Shown here: positions 1-42,864 of the stretch, piece by piece
Layout of the letters: every line of letters begins with the position of its first letter
Numbering within the stretch: the stretch's first letter is position 1
From: Phallusia mammillata
Taxonomy: Eukaryota
Direction of reading: 5' to 3'
Length of the DNA stretch: 64,000 nucleotides
NCBI GenBank assembly: GCA_965637545.1
Contig: OZ281494.1
Location: 32,364,001-32,428,000 of the forward strand
Program-made: the position numbers and the translations under genes
Notes under the pieces: model-generated
Told to the model about the DNA's origin: nothing
Database searches by the model: none
The model's input: the letters and a program-made list of their open reading frames with translations, nothing else

Positions 1-3000
1 CGGTTGCTCGTTTTTTCTTTCTCTTGACTCGGTTTGGCCTATACACCAACATGCATTGCGTTCGCTGGTACCTTGTAGTCGTCTACCTCCCAAATCCAAT
101 CTTATTACAGACCACAACGATAGCACTAGACCTAGGTATGCGTTTAAGCATATGAGTCATAAAATGATTAGAAATTAAACGTTACACCAACCAAGTATTT
201 TGCGTTAACTTTTGCAAATATTTTTCTTGACATAAACAATTTTTCCTTTGTGCCTATTTTATAGCCAAGAGTTAATACGTGGTAAAATGCCTCAAGAGAC
301 GTTGCCTAGGTTACCCTCGAATACTACCTAAATACTACTATCTAAATACCAAAGGTAAAGTTCGAAAAAAATTGACCACACTTTGTCGCAAGACGCTATG
401 TTTAGACTAATTTCCATTTAGCAGTCGCTTTTCTGTATTTGTACAGTCATAATAATACGACAATTCTTCGTAGTTATTGCTCCAAAATCGACAATAAAAA
501 TCGAACAGTCCATTTTCTTCAACTTCAAAACTATGACAAAAGAACATATTACAAGGATAAGAAAAAAAGTTCAACAAATAAATGAATAAACTGATAGAGA
601 GTTTGTATGTACCGAAAATAATGTGTTACAGACTCTTCAAAAACCGATGTCCCAAACTTTTACTTGAGCAATACGACATAGACACAGTTGAACTAGAAAC
701 GTATGCTTACTACAAAAACTCTCTTATGACAAGGAACTATATTTCTGCAGTGCCTTAATCAACATATACCGCACACAAGGCCAGTCTAAGGCCCTCGGCA
801 TGGGAATTGCGCCTCCGCTTCGTTTCCGAACCAACGACAATTTCGTCTTGAATTTCACTTTCTTGCGCGCCCGCCATATGCGAAATACGCGGCACCGGCA
901 GAAAATTTAATTATTTATTAATTAAACGCTCCCCCCGCCCTCCTTCATGTAATTCCCGAGCCGACGCGGGTTACTGTGTCACGTGACGATAGCGCGCGTT
1001 CACTTGTGACGTCAGGATTACGTGAAAAATGGATTGGAAAACAAACAATTATGAAAAAATCGTAATTTGGATCATTTTTTGGTGTTTCTGAGAACCTCAT
1101 TCAACGGAGGTGCTGTTTAGAAAAAAAATGAAGGAAGCAAATAGCATAAAAACACATTGGTGTATTTCAATATGTCGTATGTGCTCTGTCTACATGTAGC
1201 CTGTGTGGTTCAATTCCAACCCACTGAAATTCACCAACACTTGAAAGGACTTTTTTGGAAGACTTGAACCCAACTTAAGTATCACAAGAATTATATTTAT
1301 TCCAACGGCTGTTTTTGTGCAATTAAACAACACTTGAAATTTAATTTAGTTTGTCTTGAAGAATTGTGAAGATGTAAAACTTTCAGGTCATTATTTTAGT
1401 TGAAATTTGACAATAGCACAATAGTACGACCTAATTCCAAGAAATAAAAAAAAACATTCAAATATATACACAAAGAAAACGATCTATATGGGTGAAAACA
1501 GTGTATTTTGAGGCCTGATCTGTTTTTGTTTGTTTTTTCGCGCAAAATACACATAATTATTATTTTTCTTCCGATAAAATCATGTAGCAAAATAACCTAA
1601 AAAGTATAAAGTTATTGTTATGAACGCGAAATCAGCAATATCTAACAAAACTGGATCAAAACACCCAAAATCGTTGGGCTAAAAATTAGATTTTACTTTC
1701 ACACGGACCGAATTCGGTTCGCGTGGAGTGTCGGGCGAAGCGTTGTGAAGTTACGATATTCATAACGCGTGGTCGCAAGACAGGATCGATATTAGAAAGA
1801 CTAATTAGTGGTGAAAGGTTGAATTAATAACATAGGAGGTGACAGCAAGCTCATGTTGGGGTTTGGTTGTTTAAGTCTTTCAGCACTGGTCAGGCCTAAT
1901 GTGACTGAATTACTTGAAATTGATGGAAGGTTTCGACATGCCTAGGTCGGAAAAATTTATTAGTGTTACTGGGTTTCAACGGGGTGAATCATTCCTTAAT
2001 TGGGTTAAAGTTTTTTCAATATTTTCTGAAACGGTTTGACCGTGTCTAGAGCATTTTACATTTGAGGCTGATTTTGCTGTAAAATGTACAAATGTTTAGG
2101 TAAAATTTTTGGGTGTTTTTTTTCACAGGGTCTGAACTAACTAATCTATTCTTGAAATTGGGTTGTAATTTTTCAATAATATTTTCGGAATACTTGACGA
2201 GGTCAAGTGCGGTTTACATTCCAGGTTGATTTTTGGGAAAAAGTGCATATTTTTTTAGTATTTGCTCGCAATTGGCTACAAAAGAAAAAGCATTAACACC
2301 CATAAGATTTTCTGAAACTTGGACTTTTTGACTGTCAACTTCAAAAAAAGCCCATTTTAATTCCACGTTTAGTGGCATTAATCGCCCAGATGCTTGTCAA
2401 AAAATATATCTAAAATCAAAAAAGCAGAACAATGCCTTTGGCAAAAACAAATATCGCCACAATAAAAACACGATCTCCGACGCCATATTGAATTTCATTA
2501 CAAGGCTAATTGACAAGCCAACGTGTCATCACGTGACCTTCACGTCACAAAGGCGGCTGTCAGAGATTATTTCGTCATAATGCTTGTTATTAATTCCAAC
2601 TAGTCCCGTCAAGTCGCTTGGTCGTTCGCGTTTGATGAGAAGTTGATTGTTTTATTACTTGCCACGCCGAATTGGGTACAAGGCCTTGCATCAAAATGCA
2701 TTCGACGGCCTGCTACTGCTTTTATTGAGGTATTTTAGGACCCAAAATCGGTTTTAGCATAATGCAAAGTTTATGTGGAAATTATGGGATTACAGTTAGG
2801 CCTTTGAAAGTTTTATCACAAGTGTATAAAGTACGACTATATTGCTGCAAATGTGGAACACACTTGGTGCTACAAAACCCGAAATATTAAGCCAGATTAT
2901 TGTAGCAATACATTTTTTCGCGGGTAATTGGCCATTTTTGGCGCCAAGCGAATCGTCAGCGGGGGTCGTTACAGCGATTACCAATTTCGTCACGGTCCAG

Positions 3001-17379: not shown

Positions 17380-18577
17380 CTGATCGCCACTCATGGCTAC
17401 ATCCGCTTCCATGACTACCGGAGGTTCGTCAGTGCCAGTGACGTCCTGTTTCGGTGCTTGTATCTTCTCTAGAAAGCAAAGTATGCTTTTTCCTGTCGAG
17501 GATTTCTGGAAGCAAAACTTTAAAATTTAGCAAACGCGGCATTCGATTTCAACAAATACGTTTGTGACATCACATAGAGACGAATTAGTTCAAAGAAATA
17601 TGACACAAAATGGAAATACCTGCAATACGATTCCAGCACCTTTTCCTTCCGATATTAAACGTTCTCGTTCATTCATTGTGACATCATGCTCTGACGTCAC
17701 GTGTTTCTGGAATGACGTCATGCTGTCGAAAGTCAGGCGGCATGGAAAGCACATAAGTATCTGGGATTCACTGAAAAAGACGAAAGGCTATTAGAACCCT
17801 GTTTTTGTTTGCAAATTTTTAGCCGATTTAAATTACCTTCGCTGTTCGGTAGAAGTTGCATCGTTTTCTGCAGCATTTATCTGCATCAGTCGATCGAACT
17901 CGGAATCGCAAGACTTCAGATTTTCATCTCCCTCGCTAAAAGTCAGAACTCGAAAACTTTTCGCGATCTTCTCAAAAGAATTTCCACCTAAAAATGGTGC
18001 AATAAAGTTACAGCACAAAACTTACGGAGTCACTGATTTTAAACTGAAAAAGCAATTTTAGACATTTGACTTTTTTTGATAAAAACCAACCGAGTTAAAC
18101 TACAGTAGAAAATACTTTTAACTAACTGTCTGCTCAAATCAAACGCAAACCCGACTTACTTTCACTTCCGGTCACTGTTTCCGTTTTCCCACGGTCTTTC
18201 TCCCACTGACTCCACCAAGTGGTTGCAGAATTATTAAAAAACGTAAGAAACCTGGGAATTTTCGGTATTGATTCACAACTAATATTGTTGTTGTTTGCAT
18301 TCGCGTTAATAGATGACGTAATTGTGACGTCACAGGCATCGTACGCTGCGTCATGAAGGTCAGAAAGCTTTGAGATAAGGTCAGAATCGGTGACGTTGTT
18401 CGAAATCAACAGCGCGGAACCGTTGGCTCGGTACATGATTTGACCTTGGAATGACCTTGCCCCAGACGGTGGGTCGGGAGAGGATGATTGCGTCACAGTG
18501 CTTGAGTTTGTGACATCAGTAAGCTCTGTCTGATCCACGCATGGAAGTGATCCGTGAGTATGCGTAGGTGACGTCAT
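17380..18577 (-). CDS. ZFHX: ZFHX3/ZFHX4 (ATBF1/zfh2)-like zinc-finger homeobox gene, first four coding exons only (3'-partial)
   Basis: Exons are 18577-18160, 17987-17837, 17770-17620 and 17505-17380, with GT-AG introns and consistent phases 1, 2, 0, 0. The translation has FQGQIMYRANGSALLI (cf. vertebrate GEIVYQPDGSAYIV), then KSFRV, then the C2H2 finger ILMCFPCRLTFDSMTSFQKHVTSEHDVTMNERER...SILCFLEK (cf. ILMCFLCKLSFG...H....H.MTLSEEER...LVSFLEPK). Vertebrate motifs are recalled from memory. No downstream exon was recognised in 1-17379. Confidence 0.88.
18441..18457 (-). promoter_or_regulatory. Perfect DR5 nuclear-receptor element (candidate RARE) inside ZFHX coding exon 1
   Basis: The minus strand reads AGGTCA TTCCA AGGTCA. 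The sequence match is exact; function is untested. Confidence 0.5.
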
Positions 18578-21500
18578 TGTTTATCTTTCACAGACTTGGG
18601 GTGTTTTAAGAAACATCTGAAATTCAAATAAAATGGGTAAAATTTCACATCAGTAAGCGATAAAACGTCTGGGAAAATACATTTGCTGATCAATATCTTA
18701 TTCCACCAGTGCATAGGAAGCGCGGATTATAAGTCAACAACACATTACACGGCGGTTCGCCCCTTTTTAAATCATCCTTGCAGAAGACAAGTCTGGTGTC
18801 AAAAGTTTAACAACCCAAGGTCATATTGTTTACCAAGTTAAGAGAAAGACATTTAGAAAAAGGTTTGTTAAATAAGCTCCTCGTGTCTTCGTTTAACGTA
18901 TGTTCTTTAAATCCACTTGAGATAAGAACATTTGGCAATGTTTACTACACTTTTGTAACCTTCAGTAGAACATAGTTACGCATGTTCTACTGTTTAATCT
19001 GCACTATAAAACTCACTCACGTGCCAAAATTGCAGCTCAGTTATCCTGACTCATTGTTGGCGCATAAACAGTAACTATAGGCACTGAACAGTGAACTCAT
19101 GTTGACAAACAAACTCAGAGCTGCCGCTTTTGATATCTGTTAAAGAAAGCTTTAATACTGATTAATTAATACAACTTTTACAACAATACTTACTAAAAGT
19201 TACTACTGAATACTAACCTAAGCACACAACGCAACATTCAGTACATAAACAAACTACAGCAACGTTTTTTACGCTAAGTTGAAGTCACAGAACAATTGGA
19301 AGAAACCAAACAATACAGTTAAGACATGTATTTGAATTAAACTAATCATGTAACAGTAAATCCCTGAAGCAAGTACATAACACAGCTTTAACAGTTACTA
19401 TATCCGCCTATTCTGTTTCACAACTTAGTTTTTTTTATTAAAAAAGAACTGATTTGGCAGAATAAAACTGCAAATTTTTTATAGGTGCTGTTAGCTTTAA
19501 GTCAAGCCCTACGAGGCCTATACTGTACAGAACAAATGAATGGTCGCACCACGCCTTTGAACAAACGAGGCGCCTATCAGAAAATCACGAAATTAAACAA
19601 TTAATTTGTGTCAAGCTCTGCTAGCGGAGAGCAAGACAAAAAGCGAAATCCCTTTTTACGGCGCGCACAATTCAAACACACACAACCTGTGATTGTTGAT
19701 TGTTACGTCAGAATCAACATTGTTACGTGAATGCTGGCAATCCCAACATATAGTTGAGAATGGGGCTAATGACTGTTAGCCTTTGGTGGTCTTTGCTTGG
19801 AATAATTACTCTGCGCTAGGAGAATAATTAAAGTCGTAAACGTTAAACAAACAAGCCAGGCGCGGGCTTTCAGCCAGTATGAGTCGTTAAAGCCCGTTCG
19901 TAGAAATTTCGGCTACAAATTGGAAATCCTTTGTGGAGTGATTCGCTTGTTTTTTTGACCAACGGAATTGCTTTGTTTGGAATTCAATTGTTACGGCGTA
20001 ATTGGAAAGGGTCTGACAATTTTGCATCGCTATTTTACAAGCATTAGTTCAAAGTCAGACAGTTTGGGAAAAAAACTTCGCACAAAAGGGTTATAGCCTA
20101 ACTGAGAATTGTAACACTAAGCTATTACCGTCTTTAGCAAAATTTAACAATTTTTTAACAACAAAAACACATAAATTACATTGTTTAAAATGGCGGATAT
20201 ACAAATTAAATATACATGTACTACCCAAGCCATGTTCTCTTAAACACCTTTCCATTGATTTTCCATTGAATGTCCGACACAGTTCAGCTAATAATTCATC
20301 AGTACAAGGCAATAAACTCGAAACATCGATCCATTTTGCCGTAAATGATCTGTAAACAACGCATTGCAGATGGAATCCCAATGCGTTGTAACGAGGTTGA
20401 GTTTATCACCAGAAAGGTTAAAGGTATTTTGGATGATTAAAAAATAATTTCACCCCCTCTCCTTTCCGGATGTTCTTTTAAATGCCAATTCCGTTTTTAT
20501 TAATGCCAAAAATGTTGATTGATTTTTATAATGCGGTAGATACTAAATGATGCTGATAGTACAAATTATGTTGCACCTTTTTGTGTTGTTGTTGTTGTTA
20601 TTGTTTGTCGACTGTAAGAGCCTGTTTATTACTTCTGTACATTTTACAAAGTTTAAACCACGTTTTATTGCCCAAAAAACAGAAACTGGCCAGCGTTGGG
20701 CACAAAAAACAAGTGCATAAACAATATTCTACTCCTTTAAGAAAGGGTCCCGTCAGAAAATTAAAAAAAAACGTAAATGTATTTTGTTTTACTACTGTAT
20801 GGTATACGATTTACTTAAATCGTTTAAGGCAACGCAATTTAACATTTTCCGAAGGCAAACAGTTTCAACACCGCCAACTAATCAATCTTTAGGACGACAT
20901 TTGCGATAGAAAACAGACAAAAGCCTTATTGCTTGAAACGTTTAATCACAAAGATCGTAAAAATACGTCCGCACCAACGGTTGTGAAAATAACGCACCCC
21001 ATGGAGGCTTTTAAAATCAGACAAGCGACTGTGGAAAGCAGGGTCATTAAAAAAGCAATTACTCTTGACGAAAGGGATTTGACTTTACGTTGGAGAAGTC
21101 AATTTACTGACACTCAATATTTACCTAATTTAATGCCAGTCCAAAATTAACAGCAAACATAAAAATGGTGAAAAACGAATTTGGAAAGTTCAAACGACTG
21201 TAGAGGGGAGGAGTAATTAAAAGCTGACAGTTAATTGGAAAAGAATGTTAATTAACCAGCTAAAAGTGTGCTGAAATCGAATTACAGAAAGTACTGTAAT
21301 GTAAAAAATCAATCACAATTACAAAGTCCCTGTACGCTGGAAATCAAACTAAATGCCAAGCTGCTGGAATAAAAGAAATAATATAAAATGTTCAAGTCAA
21401 TTTGAGGGCTCTAAACAAACATGTAGATAAAATTTATTTTCAAGTTAAAAAGTGCATTTCCGAAACTAAGTCAATATAGGGGATTTTTTAGATAAGGTCA

Positions 21501-22670
21501 AACCATTTTTTATGTTTAAAATGTGTAATTTGCTGTCAAAAAAATGATCGGTGAAAATTAGGTGGTAACGTAATGCTATTATGACGTCACACACAAATTC
21601 TTGTTACGTGTAAAATTGGCGTCAAAAATATTAAAAGAGTGGGTGGGTATAATGAATGTTACTTTTGAGACTCATTAGGTCTTTAAAGTTTACGAAGCGC
21701 AAAGACATTCGCGATCTTTCAACATCAGCGGAAATTCACGTAACGCATCGCTGCCCCCCGACGCTTAATTGGCGCATCCCGTCACGGTTAGACGACTCCG
21801 TATGACAGAGTTGTCGGCAGAAGGCAAAATAAACCCAATGGGAATTTCAAGCCTTTCAAGTCGAAACACAGCACTAATTTTCTTTCCTGGCTGTTTCTTT
21901 GCCACACAGGCTACTCGCATATGCGACATTTTGGTTTTAAAGGCAACTAATTGGCCGCTTTTAGAACATGCTTTATGTTGCACGTAATTGTGTTTGACGT
22001 CACAATGATAAAAACAGAGTTTATAAATTCGCTGTTTAAACTCTCTACGTCTTTTGACACATTTTCAAATTGCACCTTAGGGTATCCGTATGTACCTTTT
22101 CTTAACTAAACGCCAGCTTTTGCAACACGTTTGTAGTTTCGAAAAAACAAAGGACATTTTGACATGTATTGTAAGCATGCGAATGTTTTCTTCCGTTTTG
22201 CTACACTTACATAATAAATTCTCCAGAAGTACGAATTACCAAATCACACAAATACACAAAACATGCTTATTCAAGTACGAAATTTGATTGTTCGCTTATA
22301 ATAGCATAAATTTTGTTATTTACACTATTATTTTGTACTAGAGCAAAATGACTTTGAATTCAATTTTGAATCGTTTCTTCACATGCTTAATCAGACGAGC
22401 GCTGCTTTTGTCACGCCATAGTTTGTAGACCGTAGAAATTGCAGACTCTTTGTCTGTGCAATTGTGACATCACAATGGCATACTTAAGGTTTATTTTTAA
22501 ATTTGCTGCATTTTTCCGTTCAATATCTTAATACCTTGATAAAATGTGTATTAGAATTGACTTTTATGATAAATAAGCCTAAACTAATTTAACAAACTTT
22601 ATGACGTCACAGTGGCTACACCTGACTTTAAAACGTTTTCTTTTCCGGGTTGAGCTCACGAATTTCGCAG

Positions 22671-22687
22671 TGACCTATGTTTGACCT
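22671..22687 (-). promoter_or_regulatory. Perfect DR5 nuclear-receptor element (candidate RARE) 4.1 kb upstream of the ZFHX ATG
   Basis: The minus strand reads AGGTCA AACAT AGGTCA. The sequence match is exact; function is untested. Confidence 0.55.
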
Positions 22688-25600
22688 CAATTACGCTATT
22701 AGGTGCTTGAAGTAATCGTTACTGCCTTGCTTGCTACAGAATAAAGAGAACCCAAAATTGCCTGCTCCAATTTTGCTAGACCGCTCCTCTAACCCCCAAA
22801 ATTGAAGTAAATAAACAAAAATCATCCCAACTACAGAGAGCACACGTGATGTACATTAATTAGAAATGAATTATTCATCGAAAATGAAACATACGCACTT
22901 AATTATTAATTACACGAGCCTGTATGATGTGCACATTAAAACTGTCTTAAACTATAAATCATAAAACTAAAATATCCACTGTCGCTTAAAACAAACTAAT
23001 TGGAGGCGACTGGACGAAATTCAGCAGCATGATGCTCTAAAACGCCACGCTGAGCTAATTTCAGCAAGACGGGCGAAATATTTCTCTCTAGAACACAGCG
23101 ATCGTCGCACAAGACAGGGAAAAAAGTCTGCTTATTATCGCCAGTCATTAATTTCGCCCAGGCCCAACAATTCGGCAGCCAACCGTAGGGGCATTAAGAC
23201 GCCTAGATCCGGGGCGGCGAGGGAGCTTAAAAGAGAGAGAGCTCTTCTCTAACGAGAGAGACAGGGGAGCTTAAGCGGAGATAGAAATGAATCGGAACGG
23301 TGAAAAAACTGAAGGTTCTGTCGTTAGAGTGAAGTCGTTTAAATCATGTTTTTTGCGTCTTGGGAAATACAATCGAAGTCACGTTGACTTTAAATTGAAC
23401 CAATAAAACATTAGGTTTCCATATACGATACGAATAAAGCGGGTTGCTCAAACAAGCTTTGTGCAGTCAACCATAAAAGTCGCTTGCAAGATATTTTTAT
23501 TTATTTTTAAAGCTTGCAAAAAAAATTAACGGGTGATCGGACGAAGCTCGTTCGCGAACCCAACTCAATCGCGCTGGGAACCAAAGGTGTTTTTGACATC
23601 GGCTCATTGCAATCGCATCAGCATAAAGTCACTTGCCATGAAAATCAATATCACCGGGTCTGTTCGCGCCTTTTGCCCGACTAATGACTGCCAGCAGTCA
23701 GCGGATTTTAATTTTGCCACCGTTGACAGATTTTCAACAAAACACATGAAATTCCTGAATCGTCGAATTTCTACTTTGTTGTTCGCAATATCCAGAAGCT
23801 GTTTTTTTTTCATACTAACGTTTTTTTAAGATTGCCAATGTTTTTGGTATAATCTTCATAATACGGTGTAGCTGCGGGTTTAATTATGATCCACCAATTG
23901 TGCCCTCCACTTTTTGCGCTCAATAACGTCTTAACGTTGCGCAGCTATTTCCGGCTTGGTGATTGTTCAGTGCAATTGTGCCGCTATGTTGTCTTTCACC
24001 ATCCGAAATAAACTCAACTCAATTCAAACTTCCGCCTGACTTCACAATTGCAACTTGTGACTTCATAAAAACCAAAACAATTCTTCCCGTTTTCCAACTA
24101 CTTAGCTTCAATGTGACATCCCAGTTGCTATTTCTTACGTTTTAAAGTACAATGTTTTAATAAACCAACAAACAACAAAATCAACGTTACTATATAGGTG
24201 CTAGTTTTGCGTTACCAAATTTTCTACATTTTGTGATGTGAATTGTTTTGTTACAGAAAGTGAATGAATAACCATGGCAACATCAAACAATCTCCTCGTA
24301 TTTCGAATGATCAAAGCGAAAATTGTAAAAATAAAAAATCGATGAAAAGAAGGTTTCGGGACAAAGGAGGCACATCTGTTAAACTAATGAGCTGGAGTTA
24401 AATTTACGGCAGCCCGCTGTTGACGGAAGGAAACTTTTAATTGTATGATCGATTGTTAATCTTGAAACGTCTGTTTGCCAAGAACCTTGATTATTACGTC
24501 ACAGTGACTTAGCAGGCGAATTTAATTCGTTCTAGAAGCACTTGAAGGAGAAATGGAAGCCATAGCGTGGGAATGGACGTTTTATGGCAAACGAATTAAA
24601 AATTCATTTTTGCAAAATTTTGTAGGTGTTGCTACAAAATAAACTATTCGTATGAAAACTGTTCAAAACAATTGGATTTCCAGAAGAATATATTTCACAA
24701 TTTTCTTGTGACGAGTTTGAAACCTTTCTGATATTATGTAACTACGTCAAACAAACAGTTATGACCATTACGACATTATTGCACAACTGCTTTGTAATAA
24801 TAAGCTAACATTTTGACCTTTTTAACCCCTTGATAGATTATGAAGAAAAAGTTGGGGTTTAAGACTCTTGAACACGCATGCTCAAAAAAGGTTTGCTTAC
24901 TAACATTTACCTAACTATGTTAAATTAACCCCTTGGGGATGATTTAGCCCAAGTTGAAAACCTTTGCAATAAACAGAAAACCATTTATTCATTAAACATT
25001 ATTATGAAGACCACCCGGTAAGCAATAAGCACCGACATATGCCCTCGAATTACGTTAAAGCTAAATAATTCCACATAGGGTAGCCCAAAGTTTACGGATG
25101 CAGATTTACTGCTTAAATTTACGGATCGGCTCATCCGAAATAACTAAACAACACAAACCCACGCGTTTCAAATAAATATTGATGAAAAAATAATCCACAC
25201 TAAATTACTTTCGGGGATAGGTTATTGGGAAGGGCAACTAAGAATATTACACATAAAGGCGTAGGAAGAAATGGCATTATTAGGTCACAATTGAATTCGC
25301 GATTCAGGTGAGGTTTTTTAATAAACACATTAAATCTCTAGAATGATCAAAGAGATTTCCGTCGCAAAGTCGCGGCATTTCAATTCAAAAACGTGTCGCT
25401 TGTATTGTCGCCTCCCTAATCCCGCCTCAGCATCTAAATGGAACGGCTCGAATTGTTTCGTTCCATTTAGTTTGTTTGCACAATTCGCAAAATGCCCAGT
25501 GACCGCGTTAATATTCGAAAATAAGTGTATCGCACGGGTCGACAGAACTATTGTCTGGCATTTTTAATCGAGCGACCCCCCCCCCCCCTCTCTTTTCCCC

Positions 25601-40740: not shown

Positions 40741-42864
40741 TTACTCGTAATAAAGTCCATAGATCATAGCGATTGCATAAAGCGATGTGTTTTGGTACCT
40801 AACAGTTGCGAAAGAATCGGTTTTATCATTCCACAAGCATCTACTACCTAAATAAACACCCGGTCTCTCCTTAATACTCCCAATACTAACAACTACAACG
40901 TGTTTGTATCTTTTGTAGTTCTTCGCCTTCAACGCTTCGGATATTTTGGCGGCTATGATTTGACACTCGGACCTACAAAGCTCCGGATCGTACGATTTGT
41001 CTCCGATGTGTTGTTTCAGAATGTTAGAGGCTGTTCCCTCGATTTCATAGGATTTAAAACGCGACTGCGGAAAACAAATGCAGGATATTAAACAAATCGT
41101 TCGTATACCGTCTGTTATATAACATGAGTATAGTGCAAACCAGAAAGCTATTCGGGCCGAAATCCGATTTGAACCAGTTTCAGGCTTAGTTTGAATCAAA
41201 TGGGCTTGGTGAGGGCCTGGTTTTACATTCGGCATAATTCATTAAAAAAATAAAACAAAACATTTTGTATTTAAAGTAGAGATGTACCGAATATTCGGTT
41301 TGCCGAATTTATTCGGCCGAATCGATCATTTTTGCAAAGATTCGGTTTCGGCCGAATAATTTGTTGCGATTCGGCCGAAACCGAATCTTTTACCAACACA
41401 AATTTTAAGCGTTAAACGTGTCTTTTCTGCTTATTAAGGTCCACGCAATCTTTCAAAAGTCCAAACATAACGAAAATTGCGTCAATGTTTATCTTTTTCA
41501 ACACATTATCGTTTTTCCCACGGTAGTCAAAAAAATTAGTAATTCATCGGCAAGTTGCCAATCATGCTTAAGGCAATTTTAAACCCCACAGAACTGAAAT
41601 AAGGACGAAACACAACTATTTTGCACTGGCTGCCTGGTAGATAAACATTTTTTTTTCACGTCAAACGCGAAGCGTACGACTTCGCGTGACGTCATAAATG
41701 ATTCGGTTGATTCGGCCGAATTTATTCGGCAAAACCGCCGAATATTCGGTTTCGGCCGAATCGAAATTTAGCCGATTCGGTACATCACTAATTTAAAGTA
41801 TTCGAGACAGGGAATTGTAAAAGTTACAGATATGCATTCATTCCTTGGATTGGTCGCAGTTCTGGATTAGTTAAAGGCCTAGAATAGATTTTTTGACGGT
41901 TTAACAGTCAGAGTTTGGAGCAGGGGTCGGCAACCCTGGCACGCGATGCAAATTTCCGTATGGCACGCCAAACGATTCGAATGTTTATTTCAAGTTATAC
42001 TTTAAACTGTTACACTACTTTTTTTGATTTGTACAGTCTTAAACATTTAATAGTCTTAAAACCCAGCCTACTCGCAAATAAAACTATTACTGAAAACAAC
42101 ATTGGCACGCTAAGTCATTACCACATGGAATGACAAGTAAATTGAAACGCTTTGCTTAAAAAGGTTGCTGGTCCCTGGTTAAGGGTCACGTTAAGTTTTT
42201 TTAAAAATTTAGGTATGACATCATAACTTACGTCAGGATCCATCTTGTACGTGTTTTCGTATTGTACTTTCTTGGGTTGCATGACAAACGACGCCTCACT
42301 AGCGCCCCTTTGTGATCGGATCTCGTCTGTTGCTAATAAAGAAAAAAAAATATTATATTTTTGTTTAGTACAGGTGACGTATCTAAACGAACGACGCGTG
42401 TAATCAGTAGAAAAAACAGAGTTTTTAATTACCGTGATTACTGTAAAAAAATAAATTTGGGAAAACACTATGCTAAACGTAATGCTGTCAAGATTTGCTG
42501 AGGAAATCCCCTAAAATGTAAAAGAAAGGAATTTAAAACGACAAAAACTCAATGATATCAAAAGGCTTTCTAGTGGTCTTATTGTACTACGTAGTTCCGA
42601 TGTACATTAATCACACATTTGATGTTTCCCTTGTTATTAAGTGACACTTGGAACTGTCATTGCAAACACTGGTTTTATTTTCAATGAGGACAAAAGTAAC
42701 ACTACTCCACGACTTATTGTACGCGTCAACTTTGGGAATCGAACCCACGACCTATGGATTAAACAAAACATCAAATCCTTACCATCGTCCATAGGAGAGT
42801 TGTCTGACGGAGCTAGAAGTTTTCCCTTTGACTTATCAAGCTTGACTTTCCGCGATTTATTCAT
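40741..42864 (-). CDS. Tctex1-domain dynein light chain (TCTEX1D1/DYNLT5-like), 166 aa, 3 coding exons
   Basis: Exons are 42864-42783, 42326-42232 and 41064-40741 (phases 1, 0; 501 nt). Family motifs: QYENTYKMDP, YDPELCR, RYKHVVVVSIG, GSRCLWNDKTDSF, SLYAIAMIYGLYYE*. The exact paralog is unresolved. Confidence 0.9.
41277..41790. mobile_element. Non-autonomous hAT element, 514 bp, in Tctex gene intron 2
   Basis: TIR TAGAGATGTACCGAAT / ATTCGGTACATCACTA (15/16). Perfect 8-bp TSD ATTTAAAG at 41269-41276 and 41791-41798. Many subterminal CCGAA/TTCGG repeats. Confidence 0.92.
41921..42177. mobile_element. Older Charlie-like hAT MITE, 257 bp, in Tctex gene intron 2
   Basis: Ends CAGGGGTCGGCAACC and GGTTGCTGGTCCCTG form an imperfect TIR. 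Flanks GTTTGGAG / GTTAAGGG match at 5/8 as a decayed TSD. Confidence 0.65.

What the first reader, a model, noticed from the sequence alone, without database searches (positions are those of the whole stretch)
22671..22687. Second perfect DR5 RARE 4.1 kb upstream of the ZFHX start codon
AGGTCA-AACAT-AGGTCA lies in non-coding DNA 70 bp from a TGACGTCA (22602), in the same orientation as the exonic DR5. An imperfect DR5 (AGGTCA-AGTGC-GGTTTA) is at 2200-2216. Together they argue that ZFHX is a direct retinoic-acid target in this animal.
Basis: partly seen in the sequence, partly recalled or inferred. Interest (0 to 1): 0.7.

Follow-up and report, generated by a model that had tools for sequence, protein, structure and literature searches.

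The report
Candidate retinoic-acid site upstream of ZFHX-like gene
A perfect copy of the DNA motif that the vitamin A (retinoic acid) receptor pair binds lies 4.1 kb upstream of a sea-squirt ZFHX-like gene and is unlikely to be chance, but nothing I could run shows that it is used.

Summary
AGGTCA-aacat-AGGTCA lies at 22671-22687 on the minus strand. That is the strand of a conserved first coding exon (ATG 18577, donor after 18160), so the site is 4,094 bp upstream of the ATG and in non-coding, non-repeated DNA. The window holds two perfect DR5 sites, this one and an exonic one at 18441-18457. Shuffles gave none, and about 0.005 are expected. No other spacing from 0 to 12 gives a perfect repeat.

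Function is untested. The only relative I could fetch is a 4.8 kb contig of a related ascidian, and it ends about 290 bp short of the expected orthologous position. In that species the exonic DR5 carries two synonymous changes, which is no more constraint than neighbouring codons show. Its 3.9 kb upstream region has no RARE-like repeat, although it shares near-perfect conserved blocks with the window.

The neighbouring CRE is one of 22 in the window, so it adds little. The ZFHX label could not be verified with tools. Mouse Zfhx4 has a DR5 RARE conserved as far as fish, which is a real precedent.

My reading is a candidate RAR/RXR response element (about 0.4), with a functionless chance match close behind (about 0.38). 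An earlier follow-up in this scan (s1-399134) already mentioned this site.

The parts
22671..22687 (-). Perfect DR5: AGGTCA-aacat-AGGTCA. This is the finding, a candidate RAR/RXR response element.
   Evidence: It is non-coding and not repeated in the window.
22602..22609 (.). TGACGTCA (CRE-type palindrome), with a 61 bp gap on the gene side of the DR5.
   Evidence: It is one of 22 such sites in the window, against 0.86 expected.
18441..18457 (-). Second perfect DR5, AGGTCA-ttcca-AGGTCA, inside coding exon 1 (codons R41 S F Q G Q46).
   Evidence: The related species has AGGTCG-tttca-AGGTCA.
18160..18577 (-). First coding exon of the ZFHX-like gene. The ATG is at 18577 and a GTAAGT donor follows 18160.
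   Evidence: It is 62% identical to P0001, and the donor is conserved (GTGAGT in L001).
17593..17787 (-). Open frame holding one C-x2-C-x12-H-x4-H zinc finger. It is a probable second coding exon.
   Evidence: zf-C2H2_jaz, E=0.003, below the Pfam cut-off.
23385..23401 (-). DR5-like GGTTCA-attta-AAGTCA, one mismatch to RGKTCA, in the same orientation.
2200..2216 (+).
19652..19729 (-). Conserved non-coding block, 77 of 78 identical to the related ascidian. It holds two ACGTAACAAT repeats.
19581..19606 (-). Conserved non-coding block, 26 of 26 identical.
21041..21062 (-). Conserved non-coding block, 22 of 22 identical. It contains one TGACCC (GGGTCA) half-site.
21764..21785 (-). Conserved block GTGACGGGATGCGCCAATTAAG, 22 of 22 identical, with a CCAAT and a CRE half-site. 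It may be promoter-proximal (inference). The DR5 lies 902 bp upstream of it.
40741..41235 (-). Next recognisable gene upstream: an intronless Tctex-1 family ORF. It bounds a 22 kb intergenic region.
   Evidence: PF03645, E=4.9e-25

Best explanation
The site is a consensus nuclear-receptor DR5 element. Most likely it is bound by the RAR/RXR heterodimer and acts as a retinoic-acid-responsive enhancer for the ZFHX-like gene, whose first coding exon starts 4.1 kb downstream on the same strand. It would be one of a loose group of DR5-type sites in this locus. What is shown: the motif, its strand, its non-coding and non-repeated setting, its statistical rarity, and its nearness to this gene. What is inferred: RAR/RXR binding, RA dependence, and the assignment to this gene.
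For: Two perfect AGGTCA-N5-AGGTCA sites lie 4.2 kb apart in the same orientation, while 100 shuffles gave none. About 0.0046 are expected, so P(>=2) is about 1e-5 per window. Only spacing 5 gives perfect repeats among spacings 0 to 12. DR5 sites with at most one mismatch to RGKTCA number 8 against 3.3 simulated (P about 0.02). This is the highest count of any spacing, and all 8 lie in 1-36 kb around the gene. The site is not a copy of a repeat, and the flanks of the two DR5s are unrelated. The nearest recognisable gene on the other side is 18 kb away. For precedent, mouse Zfhx4 has a DR5 RARE (GGGTCA-gcctg-AGGTCA) in an RA-regulated chromatin peak, conserved from rodent to fish (PMC7259794). 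Ascidians have RAR and RXR (PMC7827873), and Ciona Hox1 is directly RA-activated (cited in PMC3227721). Earlier scan note s1-382235 reports four perfect DR5s at this genome's RAR gene (I did not check it).
Against: There is no binding, accessibility, expression or RA-response evidence. Conservation of this site could not be tested, because the only related contig ends about 290 bp short. That species has no RARE-like DR1, DR2 or DR5 in the 3.9 kb it does cover, although real constrained elements there are near-perfect. The partner exonic DR5 is not perfectly conserved and shows only background synonymous conservation. Exon 1 is locally rich in the hexamer for coding reasons, because S-D-L is encoded twice by TCTGACCTT. 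RA responsiveness in ascidian embryos is reported as limited, with Hox1 the only clear responder (PMC3227721). A genome of a few hundred Mb should hold roughly 20 chance perfect DR5s; this figure is my own calculation from the window's hexamer frequency.
Confidence: 0.4

Rival explanations
1. The site is a chance match with no regulatory role. The upstream DR5 is one of the roughly 20 perfect DR5s that a genome of this size holds by chance. The exonic one is a by-product of the codons for the conserved peptide RSFQGQ. Their nearness is coincidence, noticed because the reader was looking for such motifs.
For: The exonic site changes synonymously in the related species at the background rate, 2 of 6 codons against 28 of 61. 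The related species has no RARE-like repeat in 3.9 kb upstream. DNA between the conserved blocks is unalignable, so most of this upstream region is unconstrained. AGGTCA as a single hexamer is not enriched: 28 against 21 expected, and 9 of 100 shuffles reach that count. Many motifs and many windows were inspected by the scan.
Against: Two perfect sites in one window have a probability of about 1e-5, or about 0.007 over the 710 windows of this genome read so far. Only spacing 5 is hit. One-mismatch DR5s are also in excess and confined to the gene's side of the window.
Confidence: 0.38
2. The site is a functional nuclear-receptor element read by receptors other than RAR. Candidates are COUP-TF or TR2/4 homodimers, or an NR4A/RXR heterodimer, on the DR5. 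Alternatively a monomeric receptor (ROR or Rev-erb type) could use the A/T-rich spacer plus the second half-site (aaacatAGGTCA).
For: The same sequence evidence applies as for the RARE reading. Ascidians express TR2/4, COUP-TF, ROR, Rev-erb and ERR during development (PMC7827873). That these receptors accept DR5 or extended half-sites is established knowledge recalled from memory and was not tested here.
Against: A perfect AGGTCA DR5 is the textbook RAR/RXR configuration. The spacer fits the ROR/Rev-erb 5' extension with one mismatch only by my own reading. Nothing here tells the receptors apart.
Confidence: 0.15
3. The site is functional but serves another gene, or it arrived on a lineage-specific insertion such as a transposon fragment and has no orthologue.
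For: A weak 15-nt inverted repeat (22354-22368 and 22797-22811, 87% complementary) brackets the site. The related contig shows no similarity in its last 480 bp.
Against: There is no second copy in 64 kb. The inverted repeat is short and at chance level. The nearest other recognisable gene is 18 kb away.
Confidence: 0.05

Closest known systems
Mouse Zfhx4 DR5 RARE enhancer (Berenguer et al. 2020, PMC7259794, Table 2)
   Same: It is a DR5 of RGKTCA half-sites next to a ZFHX-family gene. The mouse site lies in an RA-regulated H3K27ac/H3K27me3 peak and is conserved from rodent to fish. This makes RA-to-ZFHX regulation a documented vertebrate candidate.
   Different: The mouse site is GGGTCA-gcctg-AGGTCA. 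Its position relative to the gene was not compared here, and no sequence homology between the two elements is claimed. The ascidian site has no chromatin, expression or conservation support, and the ascidian gene's ZFHX identity is unverified.
RARbeta2 promoter betaRARE (DR5 GGTTCA-ccgaa-AGTTCA; sequence as listed for Rarb in PMC7259794 Table 2)
   Same: It is a DR5 architecture. I recall a CRE-like element close to the RARE in that promoter; this comes from memory and was not checked.
   Different: The betaRARE is promoter-proximal and imperfect. Here the half-sites are perfect, the distance to any transcription start is unknown, the CRE lies on the gene side of the DR5, and CREs are frequent throughout this window.
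Ciona Hox1 retinoic acid response element (Kanda et al. 2009, cited in PMC3227721 and PMC3458022)
   Same: It is the only ascidian RARE reported as directly RA-activated. It shows that ascidian RAR/RXR can drive a developmental transcription factor gene through a nearby element.
   Different: It is intronic (the intron-2 reporter in PMC3458022), and reporter, RA and DEAB assays have shown it to work. The present site has none of this.

Membership tests
DR5-type retinoic acid response element (RARE) | Two direct repeats of (A/G)G(G/T)TCA separated by 5 nt | tested here: met
   AGGTCA-aacat-AGGTCA at 22671-22687 on the minus strand
DR5-type retinoic acid response element (RARE) | Bound by the RAR/RXR heterodimer | not testable with these tools
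DR5-type retinoic acid response element (RARE) | Confers an RA-dependent change in transcription of the linked gene or a reporter | not testable with these tools
   No expression data could be reached. No paper linking an ascidian ZFHX gene to RA was found.
DR5-type retinoic acid response element (RARE) | Conserved at the orthologous position in related species | tested here: inconclusive
   The only related contig (L001) ends about 290 bp short of the predicted position. It has no RARE-like repeat in the 3.9 kb it covers.
DR5-type retinoic acid response element (RARE) | The organism possesses RAR and RXR | not tested
   The literature says ascidians have both (PMC7827873). Scan note s1-382235 reports a RAR gene in this genome.
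ZFHX3/4-type zinc finger homeobox gene (identity of the linked gene) | Several homeodomains | tested here: not met
   No homeodomain pattern or Pfam hit was found on the minus strand of 1-18.6 kb. The rest of the gene may lie beyond the window start, so this does not exclude ZFHX.
ZFHX3/4-type zinc finger homeobox gene (identity of the linked gene) | Many C2H2 (U1/jaz-like) zinc fingers | tested here: inconclusive
   There is a single C-x2-C-x12-H-x4-H finger at 17593-17787. Its zf-C2H2_jaz score is 18.2 bits, below the 22.6 cut-off.
ZFHX3/4-type zinc finger homeobox gene (identity of the linked gene) | Sequence similarity to named ZFHX proteins | tested here: inconclusive
   Exon 1 hits only one unnamed 182-aa ORF of a related ascidian. 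Exon 2 has no word match. I recall a resemblance of GQIMYRANGSALLI and of the LMCF-C-L-F finger to vertebrate ZFHX3/4 N-termini. That is a lead, not a test.

The most novel reading that the evidence does not exclude
Retinoic acid control of ZFHX through DR5 elements predates the split of tunicates and vertebrates. On this reading the ascidian locus carries a cluster of DR5 RAREs, including one written into conserved codons of exon 1, which parallels the fish-to-mouse conserved Zfhx4 DR5. That would add a second direct RA target to the very short ascidian list, where Hox1 is the only clear case.
Probability: 0.2. Interest if true: 0.6.

Novelty: new member of a known kind. Interest (0 to 1): 0.35.

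Why it matters
RA signalling in ascidians is regarded as reduced, and Hox1 is the only clearly direct target. A working DR5 at a ZFHX-type gene would give a second direct target. Together with the conserved mouse-to-fish Zfhx4 RARE, it would point to an ancient RA-to-ZFHX link in chordate neural and axial patterning. The claim is cheap to test by electroporating reporters into ascidian zygotes. If the site is inert, the locus becomes a useful caution: even two perfect consensus sites 4 kb apart can be meaningless.

Tried and rejected
- **Read evidence.** I have no transcription start, expression or accessibility data.
- **More orthologues.** The word search with exon 1, the same search with the two-species alignment, the full HMMER representative search, an exact look-up of the window's exon and two metagenome scans all gave nothing beyond one 4.8 kb contig.
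- **Gene identity.** Pfam on exons 1-3 and on ten further minus-strand ORFs, the PDB sequence search (only chance-level KCMF1 finger matches) and the exon 2 word search did not confirm ZFHX.
- **Repeat or transposon origin.** Self-BLAST and the repeat finder show no second copy. The flanks of the two DR5s are unrelated.
- **RNA gene.** There are no Rfam matches in the window.
- **CRE as specific support.** I rejected this, because 22 such sites occur in the window.
- **A non-collinear weak BLAST hit.** L001 1388-1547 against window 22454-22610 (E=0.15) was treated as chance.
- **ZFHX1B elements in PMC3836708.** These concern ZEB2, not ZFHX3/4.

Full report
**Observation.** On the + strand the window reads TGACCT-ATGTT-TGACCT at 22671-22687. 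The minus strand therefore carries AGGTCA-AACAT-AGGTCA, a perfect DR5. The only other perfect match in 64 kb is at 18441-18457, also on the minus strand. TGACGTCA lies at 22602-22609, 69 bp away start to start. The imperfect AGGTCA-agtgc-GGTTTA at 2200-2216 is present on the + strand. The one thing to add is that the motif reads as a DR5 on the minus strand, which is the strand of the gene.

**Is it more than chance?**
- The single hexamer AGGTCA is not enriched: 28 copies against 21 expected, and 9 of 100 shuffles reach 28.
- The perfect DR5 is rare. None appeared in 100 dinucleotide-preserving shuffles.
- The window's own hexamer frequency predicts about 0.0046 perfect DR5 per window, so P(>=2) is about 1e-5.
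- Of all 60 places where any hexamer recurs after a 5-nt gap, two are AGGTCA.
- No perfect AGGTCA repeat occurs at any other spacing from 0 to 12.
- With the degenerate consensus RGKTCA, 0.073 exact DR5 are expected and 2 are seen. With at most one mismatch, 8 are seen against 3.3 simulated (P about 0.02). This is the highest count of any spacing from 0 to 10, and all eight lie in 1-36 kb.

Extrapolating the window's frequency, a genome of a few hundred Mb should hold roughly 20 perfect DR5s by chance. A single site therefore proves little. Two of them 4.2 kb apart is what is unusual.

**Setting.**
- The ORF at 18137-18577 (minus) starts with ATG at 18577. It is 62% identical over 141 residues to the one relative found, P0001.
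- The similarity ends at a donor site conserved in both species, GTAAGT here and GTGAGT there. Coding exon 1 is therefore 18577-18160.
- The DR5 is 4,094-4,110 bp upstream of the ATG.
- It is non-coding, since each of the six frames has a stop within 33 codons.
- It is not part of a repeat in the window, and its flanks are unrelated to those of the exonic DR5.
- No Rfam family matches anywhere in the window.
- The next recognisable gene upstream is an intronless Tctex-1 family ORF at 40741-41235. The DR5 therefore sits in a 22 kb intergenic stretch, nearest the ZFHX-like gene.

**Is the gene a ZFHX gene?** I could not verify this with tools.
- Exon 1 has no Pfam match.
- A full HMMER search of 1.8 billion representatives hit nothing convincing except P0001. 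The other four hits with E <= 0.001 cover only short stretches. The one I inspected (P0005) is an unrelated repeat protein, and I did not inspect the rest.
- A probable second exon (17593-17787) holds one C-x2-C-x12-H-x4-H finger with a sub-threshold zf-C2H2_jaz match. It has no word-level relatives, and its PDB matches are at chance level.
- No homeodomain or further finger is found on the minus strand of 1-18 kb. If this is a ZFHX gene, its large exons lie beyond the window.
- From memory, GQIMYRANGSALLI and the LMCF-C-L-F...H finger resemble the N-terminal part of vertebrate ZFHX3/4. I mark this as a lead only.

**Comparative evidence.** P0001 lies on a single 4,782-bp Logan contig (run DRR090687, locus L001). 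It has 3,917 bp upstream of its ATG. Earlier agents name the window's species as Phallusia mammillata (I did not verify this). At 46% synonymous difference, L001 belongs to a fairly distant relative.

The two upstream regions are collinear and share sharply defined conserved blocks in otherwise unalignable DNA:

| Window coordinates | Identity | Content |
|---|---|---|
| 19652-19729 | 77 of 78 | two ACGTAACAAT repeats |
| 19581-19606 | 26 of 26 | not examined |
| 21041-21062 | 22 of 22 | one TGACCC half-site |
| 21764-21785 | 22 of 22 | GTGACGGGATGCGCCAATTAAG, with a CCAAT and a CRE half-site |

Constrained elements are therefore easy to see in this pair of species. The last block lies 3,208 bp from the ATG in the window and 3,303 bp in L001. 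The DR5 lies 902 bp beyond it, but L001 has only 614 bp beyond it. The orthologous position is therefore about 290 bp off the end of the contig, and conservation of this site cannot be judged.

Three things can be said from the part that is covered.
- L001 has no DR1, DR2 or DR5 with at most one mismatch to RGKTCA anywhere in its 3.9 kb upstream.
- The exonic DR5 is AGGTCG-tttca-AGGTCA in L001. That is two synonymous changes in six codons, against 28 of 61 for the other conserved codons of the exon. There is no constraint beyond the protein.
- The other AGGTCA copies in exon 1 come from S-D-L encoded twice by TCTGACCTT. They are not kept in L001.

**The neighbouring CRE.** TGACGTCA occurs 22 times in the window against 0.86 expected. 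It often appears as TGTGACGTCACA, and 20 of the copies lie in 1-42 kb. At that density, a CRE within 70 bp of a given point has a chance of about 7% (my calculation). L001 has no TGACGTCA anywhere upstream of its ATG, so the window's CREs at 21582 and 21995 have no counterpart there. The CRE at 22602 lies beyond the contig end. The CRE adds little to the case. The enrichment itself is striking and is recorded separately.

**Literature.**
- RAREs are direct repeats of (A/G)G(G/T)TCA spaced by 1, 2 or 5 nt (PMC8834484).
- In mouse trunk, Zfhx4 is a candidate RA target. It has RA-regulated H3K27ac and H3K27me3 peaks and a DR5 (GGGTCA-gcctg-AGGTCA) conserved in rodent, human, bird, reptile, frog and fish. 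It is one of only six RAREs conserved from mouse to zebrafish (PMC7259794).
- zfhx3 is cited as an RA target in other systems, but it did not respond to RAR manipulation in zebrafish lateral-line neurons (PMC12215742).
- In Ciona, Hox1 is described as the only gene that clearly responds, through an epidermal RA-responsive element. Mouse RARE-containing enhancers did not drive reporter expression in Ciona, which the authors link to a very reduced RA response (PMC3227721).
- Cyp26 is also RA-induced in Ciona (PMC3458022).
- Ascidians have 17 nuclear receptors, including RAR, RXR, TR2/4, COUP-TF, ROR, Rev-erb and ERR (PMC7827873).
- I found no paper linking an ascidian ZFHX gene with RA.

**Mechanism and rivals.**
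- **Candidate RARE (confidence 0.4).** The site is a genuine nuclear-receptor DR5, most likely read by RAR/RXR, and makes the downstream gene RA-responsive. It lies about 0.9 kb upstream of a conserved CCAAT-containing block that may be promoter-proximal (inference).
- **Chance match with no function (0.38).** The exonic partner would then be a by-product of its codons.
- **Functional, but read by another receptor (0.15).**
- **Serves another gene, or arrived on a lineage-specific insertion (0.05).**

The motif statistics favour function. The comparative data that exist show no constraint on the partner site and no RARE in the sister's 3.9 kb.

**Verdict.** Earlier follow-up s1-399134 on the exonic site had already mentioned this upstream DR5, and I reach the same position independently. 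I add three points: the exonic site is not under extra constraint, the CRE argument is weak, and the ZFHX label is unverified. This is a reasonable, cheap-to-test candidate, not a discovery.

Noticed in passing
window 1-42000 (e.g. 6343, 8520, 18325, 21582, 21995, 22602, 27596, 30699, 37086): The CRE palindrome TGACGTCA occurs 22 times against 0.86 expected. It often appears as the 12-nt palindrome TGTGACGTCACA, and 20 of the 22 copies lie in the first 42 kb. L001 has no upstream CRE, so the two upstream window copies that its span covers (21582, 21995) have no counterpart. The copy overlapping the ATG (aTGACGTCA = M-T-S) is kept.
   Followed up: partly
window 19652-19729 and 19581-19606: Near-perfect conserved non-coding blocks (77 of 78 and 26 of 26) are shared with a relative whose synonymous sites differ by 46%. 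The first holds two ACGTAACAAT repeats. They are strong enhancer candidates about 1.0-1.15 kb upstream of the ATG.
   Followed up: partly
window 21764-21785: A 22-nt block, GTGACGGGATGCGCCAATTAAG, is identical in both species and holds a CCAAT and a CRE half-site. It may be the core promoter region of the gene.
   Followed up: no
window 41313-41752: Five copies of the palindrome TCGGCCGA lie within 440 bp, just upstream of the Tctex-1 family ORF (40741-41235, minus). There are six copies in the whole window, about 14 times more than expected.
   Followed up: no
window 40741-41235 (-): An intronless 164-aa ORF has a clear Tctex-1 dynein light chain domain (PF03645, E=4.9e-25).
   Followed up: partly
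window 21041-21062: A conserved 22-nt block contains a single GGGTCA half-site (TGACCC on the gene strand). In the related contig a second TGACCC follows 11 nt later, but it is absent from the window.
   Followed up: no
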